A DNA stretch of 63,391 nucleotides, the filler included, from Octopus bimaculoides (taxonomy: Eukaryota): assembly GCF_001194135.2 (NCBI RefSeq). It is 6 parts of 6 records of this genome, joined end to end, with 100 filler letters (N's around TTAATTAATTAA, not from the genome) between each part and the next. Parts side by side here need not be neighbours in the genome. Positions count along the whole stretch, not along the records: positions 1 to 19,594 come from NC_068988.1; 5 more parts are not named here. One strand, given 5' to 3'. Of the stretch, positions 14,563 through 19,638 are shown one piece after another (within the stretch, counting starts at the first letter, position 1; the number at the start of each line of letters is the position of its first letter). The notes beneath the pieces were generated by a model, which was not told the DNA's origin, did not search any database, and saw nothing but the letters and a program-made list of their open reading frames with translations. The position numbers and the translations under genes were made by a program.

Positions 14563-14814
14563 CATATATATACGACGGGCTTCTTTCAGTTTCCGTCTAC
14601 CAAATCCACTCACAAGGCTTTGGTCGGCCCGAGGCTATAGTAGAAGACACTTGCCCAAGGTGCCACGCAGTGGGACTGAACCCGGAACCATGTGGTTGGT
14701 AAGCAAGCTACTTACCACACAGCCACTCCTACGCCTATATAGCAAGCCACTTACCACACAGACCCTCCTACGCCTATATAGCAAGCCACTTACCACACAG
14801 CCACTCCTACGCCT
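14311..14814 (-). mobile_element. tRNA-derived SINE, family 1 (octopus OR/OK-like), full length, with triplicated 5' head
   Basis: Minus strand: A box TGGCTGTGTGG, B box GGTTCAGTCCC, CORE-like CACCTTGGGCAAGTG, internal (TA/CA)n, 3' domain CCCCGTAACTTAGCGGTTCGGCAAAAGAGACCGATAGAATAAG, and (GAGTAAAA)n tail. Confidence 0.9.
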
Positions 14815-17174
14815 TTTACAAATTATATTGAGATAAATAATCGCGTGTAATTGTCTTTACTTCTTCCGGGAAATTGTTTGAAAAAATGTTGAAATAATTG
14901 AAATAACGTAACTACCCCGAAGCAAGGATTGCGTGGCCGTTCCATCTTTGTTGTATAATTTCACTATTCCGTTCTATCATGTGTTGATTGTCCCCGCATA
15001 TGTGTATTGTCCCAAATATGTTAGCCCCTTGTCGGTAATAAAGAAATACTTCCTGAAAATTGCTTGAACAAGTATTGATTGCTGTCCTTTTTGTTCGCAC
15101 GCCGGTCAATGCTGCCCAAGTTTATCAATAATCAAATTACTCCAGCTATAAATATGTCATTTTATTTCTTAGGTAAAACACATCAAATAATCTATAATAA
15201 TCTAGTATATTTACTTTCTGTTATGTTCGGAGGGCACATTGGTATTCCGGAACGGATGCTCTAATTTAGAGCATCTCCAGAACCTGTTGAGATGCCTTTG
15301 TTTTTGTTCATTATAGTTTAGTATTAAAAAGATGTTACTCTATTCGACTATTTAGATCGCTTTTGGACATTTGGCTGGATGCCTACTGAAAGAAATAATT
15401 ATTCATTGCTACAACAATCTATTTGTATAATAACTATACAACGAGATATAATAATAAACCGCATTATGGTTTTAAGTTACTTTGAAAGATCTACCATAAG
15501 AATATGGTGACTTAATCGAAATGACATGCCGATCAGTTCAGCGGAATATGTAAGAATTCGAGGTGTCATGGCCTTATCTTACTAGCTTAGCTTTCAATTT
15601 CGAGTTCTATAGAATTGACATTATCCTATATGAGGCAATCCAAATCTATTATATTCGGTCAAAGTTTATATGCAATGTTATTCGATATATTATCCAACTC
15701 TATTGGTGTCACGTACTTTGTCAGTTTGTATAATTGAGTATGAATTTAAATAATCGTAATTTACTACAATTACTTTCTAGATACTTTGGTGAATATTTAA
15801 TTTGAAATTGTACAAGCCCATCTTACGTCTATACAAGGCGCATATGACAGCGCATTACAGGCGTAATGGAGAATCGTTTGTATAACAACACTATTCTAGG
15901 CAGTATCTATAAGGAAGATACGTAACATACACCTAACCCTTACAAATAGCTATCAATGCATATATCTAATATCAGTACAGTACACAGTTTCTGCTGTAGA
16001 AGCTGGATATAATGAGTTTATCATTAGCTTTCTGTGATAAATTTTTAAATAACCCATGATATAAGCTCTCATTCTGAGAATAATTCTTCAAGTACACATA
16101 TCGCACGCCGTTAAATTGGAGACGACAGGGACTGGACGTTATGATGGTATGTCAGCCTGCGCAATGCAACAGATAAGTCCAGAGTAAAGATAGGTTTGAT
16201 ATTGTTCCAACTGGCAAATGAAATTACATTAGCTGTCTTTCTTATTCACATTACATGAATTATTAGATATTTCTTGTTGGTGTGCATGCAATAATAACTA
16301 TAGAGATTTAGAGAAAATATTATATCGCAGAGAATTTATACCGTTACATATATATCAACTGATAAACTATAGCTTACGCTGATATATACATGCACACATA
16401 CATATACACGTACGCACACACGCTTAACCACACACACACATGTATGTAAATGTAATGTAAGTGTCTGTATGTATTTATGCTATATGTACGTATATATGTG
16501 TGTATGTTTGCACATGTTGAGCAAAATATGGATTCCTAGAACCATGTGGCTATCGCAGAATGATCTTGTAGAGAACCCTTGTCTCACACACTATAGCAAT
16601 ACACTACGAAGGCGTATAATGGAGATTTTTATGCGACCGATTTCCAGGAGATACAATCGAAGAATTTATTTTATGAAGAAAAGTATATAAAATGATTTGA
16701 GACACAATGAACCTCTTTTGAGCACCTGCAGCTCAGTCTTGTTTTCTTCATTTAATCCCATCAAACACCTATCAATGCGGTTATGGTAAGAGGTTGTATG
16801 CCCCCTCCCATTTTTCAGCACCAAAGATACGAAGCTTCGTTGGATATGTGTGGAACGATCTTGCTCTGAATCTCCTATATCATGCCAGCCAGTTTTGGTA
16901 TCTACACTACTCTACAGCTTCTGCTCTCATACACACATGCAATATCTACATGCTCTCATACACACGCAATATCATTTATATGAACACACACGCATAGATA
17001 CACGCACACACAATGACATATCGACATATAGGGACTCACACACACACGCGCGCACACACACATACACACACACAATACCCATCCTCTAGAAACCACATGC
17101 TAGTAATGTTACACGCTACTGTGATTAACTAGTTAGCTCCATCCTCCCAAGCACATGAGCGCATTCTGTTATTC

Positions 17175-17345
17175 ATTTACCTATTTCAGTCATTTGACTT
17201 CAGCCATGCTGGTGCACTGTCTTAAACGGTTATAGACGAAGAAATCGATCAATTCCAGGACTTAAAATTTGTTAGCCTAGTACTTATTGTATCAGTATCT
17301 TTTGCCGAACCGCTATGTTACGGGAACATAAACACACCAGCATTG
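17175..17345 (-). mobile_element. Family 1 SINE, 3' part
   Basis: tttcagtcatttgact..ccatgctgg...tagtacttatt...ttttgccgaaccgctatgttacggg..ataaacacacc matches 14335-14480. Confidence 0.8.
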
Positions 17346-17463
17346 GGTGGGGAAGAACATATAACTGCATGACGGGGGTAGTGCCCGTCACCACGGCACC
17401 AGCTACACACACACACACACACGCACGCACACACATACGCAGGAACACACATACGCACGCATA

Positions 17464-17510
<47 letters not shown>

Positions 17511-17514
<4 letters not shown>

Positions 17515-18436
17515 GAGGTCACAAAAGAGACGGAGGGTACTGACCAGCGCCAGCTATGGCTAGAGTCAAGAGTTAAAACAACTCAAATGTCATAAAGCAA
17601 TGTATTTAATGACTGACAAAGGGAGGTAAATTCCTAGGGTACAAAGTCAAATCGAACGATTTGAGATTTTGATGCATAGCATCTTAATTCTCATCAGCGA
17701 CTCTTAAAGAATAGGGCTGACAAATCATCACACCAAGCTGACATACCATCACACAGTCCAGTCCCTGTCGTCTCAACTACTTCTGTCTGTCATGCAAGAA
17801 AATCCGTTGAAATCCTGTGCTGATTTCCAAAGTGGTAACATTGAAAGCAACAAATTAAATGGGTGGTTTAATAGCAATTTGAACCTAGATGCAAAACTGA
17901 TAGAGGTTATAAAATTGACGAGAGGTACCGACCAGCACCGACCAAATATAAGCTGGGAACTTACCCCCCTTTGTTAGTCAATAAGTACAATGCTTTGTGG
18001 CTTTTGAGTTGTTATAACTCTTGTTTCTAAAAATGTTTGATACTGGTCAATACCCACTATCACTTTTGTGATATCTACTAATTTTGCCTGAATGTTCAAA
18101 TTGCTAATAAGCCACTCATTTAATTTGTTTACACTTTTACCGCTTTCAAAAACAGCAAATATTTTCAATGTTTTTTTCTTATAAAACTGACAGAGAGAGT
18201 TAAGAGTCGCTGACGAGAATTAAGAGACTCTGCATGAAAATCCGAAATCGCTCGTTCGATTATGTACGCTGGGAACTCACCTGCCTTTGTCGATCATTAA
18301 GTACAGTGCTTTGTGACTTGTATTAACTCTTGTTTCTAGAAATAGCTGGTTCTGGGCAGCACTCTCCGTCACTTTTGTGCCCTCTATTAATTTTGCCTTT
18401 AGATTCACATAGCTAATGAGTCACCCATTTAATTTT
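17511..18436. pseudogene. Inverted array of four decayed exon-like units (A+, B+, C-, D-)
   Basis: 17511-17707 is the diverged reverse complement of 18200-18388. 17783-17952 is the diverged reverse complement of ~18040-18199. Donor-like AAAGG(G/C)(A/G)G|GT(A/G)A motifs lie at 17626 (+), 17964 (-) and 18280 (-). Substitutions look codon-patterned. The parent gene is unidentified. Confidence 0.55.
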
Positions 18437-19638
18437 TTGTATATATATATANNNNNNNNNNNNNNNNNNNNNNNNNNNNNNNNNNNNNNNNNNNNNNNNN
18501 NNNNNNNNNNNNNNNNNNNNNNNNNNNNNNNNNNNNNNNNNNNNNNNNNNNNNNNNNNNNNNNNNNNNNNNNNNNNNNNNNNNNNNNNNNNNNNNNNNNN
18601 NNNNNNNNNNNNNNNNNNNNNNNNNNNNNNNNNNNNNNNNNNNNNNNNNNNNNNNNNNNNNNNNNNNNNNNNNNNNNNNNNNNNNNNNNNNNNNNNNNNN
18701 NNNNNNNNNNNNNNNNNNNNNNNATATATATCCAAGAAAGTTAGGGGTTGTGAATACAACCCACTAAGGAATAATATCTATCCTATATATTGCTGGAAAA
18801 ATACCTAATTATTATTACACTAGTGTTTTTTCATTGCATTAACAAGTGCAATAAATGGGTGCGGGTAAAAACATATTTTCCCATTAATTTATATAGCAAT
18901 AAGACAATGGTGGGGATAGGTGGGATTCATCAACTTGCAGACATTGTATTGTGTCAAATTACTTGTTTCTTTGTGTACTAAAATAACAATAATAACAATA
19001 TACAAACGCATGTGATATATTATGCAATATCAGTGATTAGAAAATGACATATACTGACAGAAAATGGGATAATGACTTATAGCTGTTTCAGTTTAGCAGT
19101 GATGTGCCTCATACTATCTATATCACTCCAGTCGACTGAAGTACTTAATAGATGAAATACAGGTACATGGATGATTCTCTAGGCCTCTTCAGACATTTTA
19201 TAAAGTTCATAAAGTTAAGTTAAAAATATCCAAATATAAAATATTAAAAAAATAAAACCCCACATATATATGCATACTTAAACATATACATAATCATACA
19301 TAAATAAACATAAATACATATATATATACATTTAAATGTACATACGCAAATCCATACATGCACAGAAATGAATCGATTATGATTTTTTATTATATACGAG
19401 GAGGACAGACACACATATATATATACACCCAAACGTACGTACGTACACATATGTATACACAGACATTTCCGAACAGACATGTTCATTGGTACATACGCAT
19501 TAGTTGCGTTTGGAACGGAGGACTGGTGCATTGGTTGACATCGTTATAATTCCAACAAAAATGTCTGAACCTATATTTATATATATATATATATNNNNNN
19601 NNNNNNNNNNNNNNNNNNNNNNNNNNNNNNNNNNNNNN

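What the first reader, a model, noticed from the sequence alone, without database searches (positions are those of the whole stretch)
17511..18436. Four decayed exon-like units arranged as a ~900-bp imperfect palindrome (A B | C' D')
Seen: two tandem units on + face two on -, with donor spacing D to C of 316 bp. Aligned peptides NKLNGWFNSNLNLDAKLIEVIKLTRGTDQ / NKLNEWLISNLNIQAKLVDITKVIVGIDQ / KLNG*LISYVNLKAKLIEGTKVTESAAQ and HKA(M/L)YL(M/L)(T/I)(D/N)KG differ by synonymous or conservative codon changes (CTG/TTA, TTC/TTT, AGT/AGC, CAT/CAC, TAT/TAC). Units A, C and D end in a donor-like GT (B is truncated before that point), and D is joined to C by a ~90-nt intron-like spacer ending cttaactctctctgtcag. 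Stops and frameshifts show decay. Inference: serial exon duplication followed by inversion. Anchor spacing (FAV...GW...L...EG...AL..DK) loosely recalls the LOX segment before PIAIQL, which would link it to the 48981 exon; this is weak and unverified. Any transcript across it would form long dsRNA, relevant because coleoid cephalopods have extensive ADAR editing.
Basis: partly seen in the sequence, partly recalled or inferred. Interest (0 to 1): 0.7.

Follow-up and report, generated by a model that had tools for sequence, protein, structure and literature searches.

The report
Decayed non-coding inverted repeat, not exons
The four-unit imperfect palindrome is really there, but nothing shows that its units were ever exons: it looks like an old, neutrally decaying inverted duplication of a ~316-bp non-coding repeat lying between two (TA)n microsatellites, which is ordinary for a repeat-rich animal genome.

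Summary
The repeat structure at 17510-18439 is confirmed. About 1.4 units of a ~316-bp repeat on the + strand face about 1.6 units on the - strand. Copies are 72-82% identical. The palindrome axis is near 17989, with an 89-nt loop. The structure is flanked by (TA)n and, on the right, an assembly gap. A transcript would fold into a long but imperfect hairpin (z = -24).

- Differences between copies fall evenly on the three codon phases (for example 19/18/19).
- A 7-bp indel splits the two "peptide" blocks into different frames in 2 of 3 copies.
- Open frames are no longer than in shuffled sequence.
- Pfam in six frames, including the lipoxygenase family, gave nothing.
- A 5.8-billion-protein word search gave nothing.
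- An exhaustive profile search of 1.84 billion proteins gave only one spurious bacterial repeat-protein hit.
- Donor-like GGTRAGT motifs also occur in other non-coding repeats of the window.

Best reading: a non-coding unit was duplicated in tandem and then copied in inverted orientation by a fold-back type event. Afterwards it decayed, gained a 69-bp insertion, and was trimmed by microsatellite growth. Whether the unit is also dispersed through the genome as a transposon family could not be tested, because no host genome was reachable. Interest is low.

The parts
17474..17511 (.). Left flanking (TA)19 microsatellite, preceded by a (CA)n/(CGCA)n tract at 17404-17461. It replaces the first ~50 bp of copy A.
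17510..17625 (+). Copy A: 3' two-thirds of the 'exon-like' segment (…IIEVTKETEGTDQ…, then HKAMYLMTDKGR in another frame). It is followed by GTAAAT.
   Evidence: (I1, I4)
17626..17789 (+). Spacer between A and B, homologous to the D-to-C spacer but interrupted by an insertion.
   Evidence: (I5, 85% over 55 nt)
17706..17774 (+). 69-bp insertion present only in the left arm. 41 bp of it (17734-17774) match 16119-16159 on the other strand at 90%, so it is a fragment of a different repeat.
17790..17944 (+). Copy B: 5' two-thirds of the segment (MQENPLKSCADFQSGNIESNKLNGWFNSNLNLDAKLIEVIKLTRGTDQ). It ends at the inversion junction.
   Evidence: (I2, I3)
17945..18033 (-). Loop of the palindrome: the 3' block of copy C (HKALYLLTNKGG + GTAAGT + 19 nt). 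It has no partner on the left arm. The inversion junction is at about 17944/17946.
   Evidence: (I2: 89 nt between arms)
17965..18186 (-). Copy C: the only full-length 'exon-like' segment (222 nt). It carries a 7-bp block that shifts the frame between the two peptide blocks.
18187..18280 (-). 94-nt spacer between D and C (GTGAGT … ctctctgtcag).
18281..18439 (-). Copy D: it lacks the first ~65 nt, has one in-frame stop, and lacks the 7-bp block.
   Evidence: (D4, D6)
18440..18733 (.). Right flanking (TA)n, interrupted by a 272-N assembly gap (18452-18723) that resumes in (AT)n.

Best explanation
This is old, non-coding repeated DNA with no detectable function. A unit of about 316 bp first became a short head-to-tail array (copies D and C on the - strand). 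A stretch of about 1.4 units was then copied in inverted orientation directly next to it, leaving an 89-nt unpaired loop. That geometry is what a fold-back (snap-back) repair or template-switch event produces. Afterwards all four copies drifted neutrally to about 75% identity. The left arm took up a 69-bp fragment of another repeat. (TA)n microsatellites at both ends grew and trimmed the outer units at different points. Shown: the repeats, their geometry, the equal divergence of all copies, and the absence of any coding or hairpin-preserving signal. Inferred: the order of events and the fold-back mechanism. If the locus is transcribed, it would fold into a long mismatched hairpin as a by-product of its structure.
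For: Geometry:
- One axis, an 89-nt loop, and arms in register once the 69-bp insertion is removed.

Age:
- All copy pairs are about equally diverged: 74-76% in the core shared by B, C and D, and 76-82% in the block shared by A, C and D.
- Two SINE-like copies in the same window are similarly diverged, at 76%.

No coding signal:
- Differences are even over the three phases, which covers all six frames.
- The longest open frames are matched by 12-25% of shuffles for the arrays and 3.6% for unit C alone. Of 95 background windows, 22 have at least 79 open codons.
- A 7-bp indel separates the two peptide blocks in A and C.
- No Pfam hit in any frame and no protein homologue.

No RNA gene:
- No tRNA. 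Rfam gave only microsatellite noise.

No selection on the hairpin:
- Arm partners are no more alike than non-partners.
- Arm mismatches give 23 G:U against 25 A:C.

Splice motifs:
- Donor-like GGTRAGT also sits in other repeats of the window.

Copy number in the window:
- There is no other copy of the unit in the 19.6-kb piece.
Against: - Genome-wide copy number could not be measured, so a dispersed mobile family is not excluded.
- Copy C has an 81-codon open frame, reached by only 3.6% of shuffles. After correction for frames and copies this is weak.
- GT(A/G)A(G/A)T after three copies, and a pyrimidine tract plus AG before C, do resemble splice signals. Each can be explained by one ancestral chance occurrence.
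- With about 25% divergence, any microhomology at the junction that would prove a fold-back event cannot be read.
Confidence: 0.6

Rival explanations
1. It is one copy, or a remnant, of a mobile element whose long inverted arms are built of tandem sub-repeats. Candidates are a foldback-type transposon, or a tandem-repeat-bearing MITE or Helentron derivative as described in other molluscs and in Drosophila. It would have inserted into a (TA)n tract.
For: - Inverted arms made of tandem units, with (TA)n on both sides.
- Such elements are known: the Tetris foldback transposon (PMC4079207), the tandem-repeat MITE DTC84 in a clam (PMC3879986), and Helentron-borne satellite-like arrays in oyster (PMC7492417). 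All were listed.
- The window is full of other interspersed repeats.
Against: - The two outer ends fall at different positions of the unit. The right arm extends about 50 bp further, so there are no matching termini.
- No target-site duplication can be read in the microsatellites.
- No second copy lies in 19.6 kb.
- The arms are as diverged from each other as the tandem copies are. That fits an in-situ event as well as it fits an element.
- No transposase or other domain lies nearby.
Confidence: 0.22
2. One reading: the units are decayed duplicates of a host protein-coding exon with its short intron, possibly lipoxygenase-related, later inverted.
For: - Splice-like motifs bound the 222-nt segment.
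- Copies B and C are open in the same frame for 70-81 codons.
Against: Searches show the following:
- No homologue and no lipoxygenase profile match.
- No codon-phase bias.
- The frame is not better conserved than the others.
- Open-frame length is within chance.
- There is a frame break between the two peptide blocks in 2 of 3 copies.
Confidence: 0.07
3. It is a functional hairpin-RNA locus, either an endo-siRNA source or an ADAR substrate or sponge, maintained for its double-stranded structure.
For: - Strong predicted hairpin, z = -24.
- Octopus has abundant hyper-editing in inverted repeats (PMC5625713).
Against: - The arms are only 75.5% paired. The longest Watson-Crick run is 13 bp and the best 50-nt window is 84% paired. 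Hyper-editing is tied to long, nearly perfect duplexes (PMC5625713).
- There is no excess of G:U-compatible changes on either strand.
- Arm partners are not more alike than non-partners.
- No evidence of transcription is available.
Confidence: 0.05
4. It is an assembly artefact: a chimeric or fold-back join next to a gap.
For: - The region borders a 272-N gap and lies between microsatellites. The other three gaps of the piece also have (TA)n-type or tetranucleotide repeats at their edges.
Against: - Artefactual palindromes have near-identical arms. Here the arms differ at about 25% of sites and by a 69-bp insertion.
- The join at 17944/17946 lies inside a contiguous sequence, about 500 bp from the gap.
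Confidence: 0.03

Closest known systems
Fold-back inverted duplications / palindromes formed at tandem repeats in eukaryotic non-coding DNA
   Same: Two arms in opposite orientation separated by a short unpaired spacer (89 nt). The arms were copied from an adjacent pre-existing array. AT-rich, cruciform-prone (TA)n tracts lie nearby.
   Different: The event is old (about 25% arm divergence), so the junction microhomology that defines the mechanism cannot be read. The mechanism is inferred from geometry only.
Foldback transposons with tandem sub-repeats in their arms (Drosophila FB, Tetris; PMC4079207)
   Same: Long inverted arms composed of tandem units. No coding capacity in most copies.
   Different: No matching termini, no readable target-site duplication, only about 1.5 units per arm, and no evidence of other copies.
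Satellite-like short arrays carried by mollusc mobile elements (DTC84 MITE, PMC3879986; Helentron-associated arrays in oyster, PMC7492417)
   Same: Short arrays of units a few hundred bp long, embedded in euchromatic, repeat-rich sequence of a mollusc-type genome.
   Different: None of the element-specific ends or flanking modules were found here. The arrays in those elements are head-to-tail, not palindromic.
Inverted repeat pairs that form ADAR-edited dsRNA (inverted Alu pairs; octopus hyper-edited repeats, PMC5625713)
   Same: Neighbouring inverted copies of one repeat that could pair within one transcript.
   Different: The duplex here is heavily mismatched, and transcription is unknown.

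Membership tests
Protein-coding exon (host gene; lipoxygenase PF00305 proposed) | Profile or sequence match to a protein family or to any known protein | tested here: not met
   - Pfam at E<=10 for four peptides, and at E<=1 for all six frames: no lipoxygenase and no credible family.
- 5.8-billion-protein word search: 0 hits at E<=1.
- Exhaustive profile search of 1.84 billion representatives: one spurious repetitive bacterial protein.
Protein-coding exon (host gene; lipoxygenase PF00305 proposed) | Excess of third-position (synonymous) differences between copies | tested here: not met
Phase counts are 19/18/19, 13/10/10 and 18/14/13.
Protein-coding exon (host gene; lipoxygenase PF00305 proposed) | One continuous reading frame from acceptor to donor, longer than chance | tested here: not met
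   A 7-bp block in A and C puts the two peptide blocks in different frames. Open-frame lengths are within the shuffle and background distributions.
Foldback-type or tandem-repeat-bearing DNA transposon | Inverted arms built of tandem sub-repeats | tested here: met
   1.4 units face 1.6 units.
Foldback-type or tandem-repeat-bearing DNA transposon | Matching termini and a target-site duplication | tested here: not met
   The arms end at different positions of the unit, and both ends run into (TA)n, so no duplication can be read.
Foldback-type or tandem-repeat-bearing DNA transposon | Multiple dispersed copies in the genome | not testable with these tools
   - No other copy in the 19.6-kb piece.
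- The public DNA and protein collections reachable here hold no host DNA. Controls with the window's own abundant SINE-like repeat also returned nothing.
SINE or other small-RNA-derived repeat | tRNA-, 5S- or 7SL-like head, or an Rfam match | tested here: not met
   ARAGORN found no gene. Rfam at E<=1 gave only microsatellite-type miRNA noise and one E = 0.28 bacterial sRNA match.
Hairpin-RNA / ADAR-substrate locus | Long stable intramolecular duplex | tested here: inconclusive
   MFE is -382 kcal/mol with z = -24. However, only 75.5% of arm positions pair, and the longest Watson-Crick run is 13 bp.
Hairpin-RNA / ADAR-substrate locus | Transcription, small RNAs or A-to-G clusters | not testable with these tools
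   No expression data are available.
Assembly fold-back artefact | Near-identical arms | tested here: not met
   The arms are 72-79% identical and one carries a 69-bp insertion.

The most novel reading that the evidence does not exclude
The palindrome is one member of an undescribed cephalopod foldback-type mobile family whose arms are tandem ~316-bp units. Its transcribed copies would supply part of the unusually large pool of dsRNA that feeds ADAR hyper-editing in octopus.
Probability: 0.08. Interest if true: 0.4.

Novelty: new member of a known kind. Interest (0 to 1): 0.1.

Why it matters
It matters little. The result removes a false lead: a supposed decayed exon family and a lipoxygenase link. 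It also shows that peptide-level "conservation" between DNA repeats about 75% identical is not evidence of coding. The locus is one more example of the inverted, microsatellite-flanked repeats that make such genomes hard to assemble and rich in potential dsRNA. It would become interesting only if the unit proved to be a dispersed foldback-type family or an expressed hairpin.

Tried and rejected
Coding origin, rejected:
- Protein word search with an alignment of the unit peptides.
- Exhaustive profile search. Its one hit is a 2143-aa bacterial repeat protein that scored by summing seven short low-complexity stretches.
- Codon-phase test, frame control and open-frame shuffles.

RNA gene, rejected:
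- Rfam and ARAGORN.

Copies elsewhere, nothing found or uninformative:
- Exact look-ups of three window ORFs in the contig index.
- A degenerate 32-nt pattern from the unit against metagenome contigs.
- Control scans with the window's SINE-like repeat at DNA level and protein level. Both also returned nothing, so these collections simply lack host DNA and say nothing about copy number.
- A full-text search for the SINE sequence in papers.
- A profile nhmmer search of the piece, which found only the four known copies.

Selection for the hairpin, rejected:
-.

Splice motifs as evidence, rejected:
- GGTRAGT also occurs in other repeats of the window, and acceptor-like motifs are at chance level.

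Organism:
- The SINE-like repeat resembles, from my memory only, the abundant octopus SINE. This was not verified by any tool.

Full report
**Observation**

The sequence between 17510 and 18439 consists of four partial or complete copies of one unit. The - strand carries two head-to-tail copies. Copy D is 18439->18281, a 94-nt spacer is 18280->18187, and copy C is 18186->17965 plus 19 nt down to 17946. The D-to-C period is 309-316 bp.

The + strand carries the 3' part of a copy (A, 17510-17625), a spacer (17626-17789) and the 5' two-thirds of another copy (B, 17790-17944). The A-to-B period is 388 bp because the left spacer contains 69 extra bases at 17706-17774.

BLAST identities between copies are 72-79%, with E-values from 1e-12 to 7e-45. 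A profile built from the four copies finds them and nothing else in the 19.6-kb piece.

**Geometry**

The arm coordinates define one palindrome, once the 69-bp insertion is allowed for.
- Left arm: 17510-17944.
- Loop: 17945-18033 (89 nt), which is the 3' block of copy C.
- Right arm: 18034-18439.
- Axis: about 17989.

The right arm reaches about 50 bp further into the unit than the left arm, whose outer end is replaced by (TA)19. On the right, the structure runs into (TA)n, a 272-N gap, and (AT)n again.

**Is it coding?**

Every test says no.

1. Differences between aligned copies fall evenly on the three codon phases: B-C 19/18/19, C-D 13/10/10, B-D 18/14/13. The three phases are the same classes for all six frames, so this rejects a coding constraint in any frame.
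2. The other five frames give 48-58% identity and 44-70% positives. The apparent conservative changes are what 75% DNA identity gives in any frame.
3. A 7-bp block (CTCAAAW) present in A and C but not in D puts the NKLNGW and HKALYL blocks in different frames in two of three copies.
4. The longest open frames are 79-89 codons. For the arrays, 12-25% of dinucleotide-preserving shuffles reach these lengths; for copy C alone, 3.6% do. Of 95 background 316-bp windows in the same piece, 22 have at least 79 open codons.
6. A word-indexed search of 5.8 billion proteins with an alignment of the unit peptides gave no hit at E<=1. An exhaustive profile search of 1.84 billion representatives gave one hit. 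That hit is a 2143-aa bacterial repeat protein that scores by adding seven short matches of the type GKLVNVTGTISGTD. It is spurious.
7. GGTRAGT occurs nine times in the window. Three occurrences lie in a 39-bp tandem repeat and two in a SINE-like repeat. The acceptor-like pattern is at chance frequency.

**Is it an RNA gene or a SINE?**

No tRNA-like gene was found. There is no Rfam match other than microsatellite-driven miRNA noise.

**Hairpin**

As RNA, 17505-18445 folds to -382 kcal/mol, against -209 ± 7 for shuffles (z = -24).

The duplex is poor, however. Of 376 aligned arm positions, 284 pair (75.5%). The longest Watson-Crick run is 13 bp, or 22-24 bp with G:U allowed. The best 50-nt window is 84% paired.

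Arm mismatches give 23 G:U against 25 A:C pairs, so neither strand's hairpin has been preserved. Arm partners (A-D 82%, B-C 74%) are no closer than non-partners (A-C 76%, B-D 74%, C-D 76-77%).

Published work ties octopus hyper-editing to long, nearly perfect duplexes made by neighbouring inverted repeats, and reports that such loci are unusually common in that genome (PMC5625713). Even if this locus is transcribed, it would be an ordinary and rather weak example.

**Context**

The piece has no credible gene. It is 15-44% G+C in 1-kb windows and crowded with microsatellites. It has four assembly gaps, which have microsatellite repeats at or near their edges.

It also contains other interspersed repeats. 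One example is 17165-17349 ~ 14317-14488 at 76% identity. Another is 14092-14298 ~ 7649-7853 ~ 6049-6251 on the other strand.

The SINE-like copies are about as diverged from each other as the palindrome's units are. From memory only, that SINE-like sequence resembles the abundant octopus SINE. No tool confirmed the organism.

**Best explanation**

This is a non-coding ~316-bp unit that was duplicated in tandem. About 1.4 units were then copied in inverted orientation next to the array, leaving an 89-nt spacer. This is the footprint expected of a fold-back or template-switch repair event.

Neutral decay to about 75% identity followed. A 69-bp fragment of another repeat then inserted; 41 bp of it recur at 16119-16159 at 90%. 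Microsatellite growth trimmed both ends.

The structure and the lack of constraint are shown. The order of events and the mechanism are inferred.

**What stays open**

It remains unknown whether the unit, or the whole palindrome, is also dispersed in the genome. Dispersal would make it a foldback-type or tandem-repeat-bearing mobile element of the kind described in Drosophila and in bivalves (PMC4079207, PMC3879986, PMC7492417).

This could not be tested. The reachable collections contain no host DNA. Control scans with the window's own SINE-like repeat returned nothing at DNA level or protein level. Exact look-ups of three window ORFs found no contig.

The unequal arm ends, and the absence of a second copy in 19.6 kb, speak mildly against a clean transposon copy.

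**Verdict**

The repeat structure is real but ordinary, and the exon and lipoxygenase reading is not supported. Interest is low.

Noticed in passing
window 17165-17349 and 14317-14488: Two copies (76% identical) of a SINE-like interspersed repeat containing …TTTCAGTCATTTGACTGCGGCCATGCTGGAGC… and …TTTTGCCGAACCGCTAAGTTACGGGGACATAAACACAC…. One lies only 160 bp upstream of the palindrome. From memory it resembles the abundant octopus SINE; this was not verified.
   Followed up: partly
window 14092-14298, 7649-7853, 6049-6251 (- strand): Three copies (68-74% identical) of another interspersed repeat segment. At 14092-14488 it is contiguous with the SINE-like copy, so it may be that element's 5' half.
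   Followed up: no
window 17734-17774 and 16119-16159 (- strand): A 41-bp segment, 90% identical, is shared between the 69-bp insertion in the palindrome's left arm and an unrelated site 1.6 kb upstream. It is a fragment of a third repeat family. The similarity does not extend beyond about 43 bp.
   Followed up: partly
window 1847-1960, 5533-5619, 9591-10498, 18452-18723: Microsatellites abut or lie close to all four assembly gaps: (TATA)n, (TCTA)n/(AT)n, TA-rich sequence, and (TA)n. The assembler evidently broke at these repeats, so true lengths and local order near the gaps are uncertain.
   Followed up: no
window 14702-14814: A 39-bp tandem repeat, 2.9 copies at 93% matches. Each copy carries a GGTAAGT on the - strand, which shows that donor-like motifs occur in non-coding repeats here.
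   Followed up: partly
window 2500-3400: A block of trinucleotide and 21-36-bp repeats ((TCA)n, (CCT)n, (ATC)n, (CAT)n) with strong C-over-G skew (GC skew -0.50 in 2001-3000).
   Followed up: no
window 7-615, 4342-4455, 12227-12271: Other self-complementary stretches: a 65% palindrome-like match over about 630 bp built on microsatellites, an (AT)n-centred palindrome, and a 45-nt 89% palindrome. Inverted structure is common in this piece.
   Followed up: no
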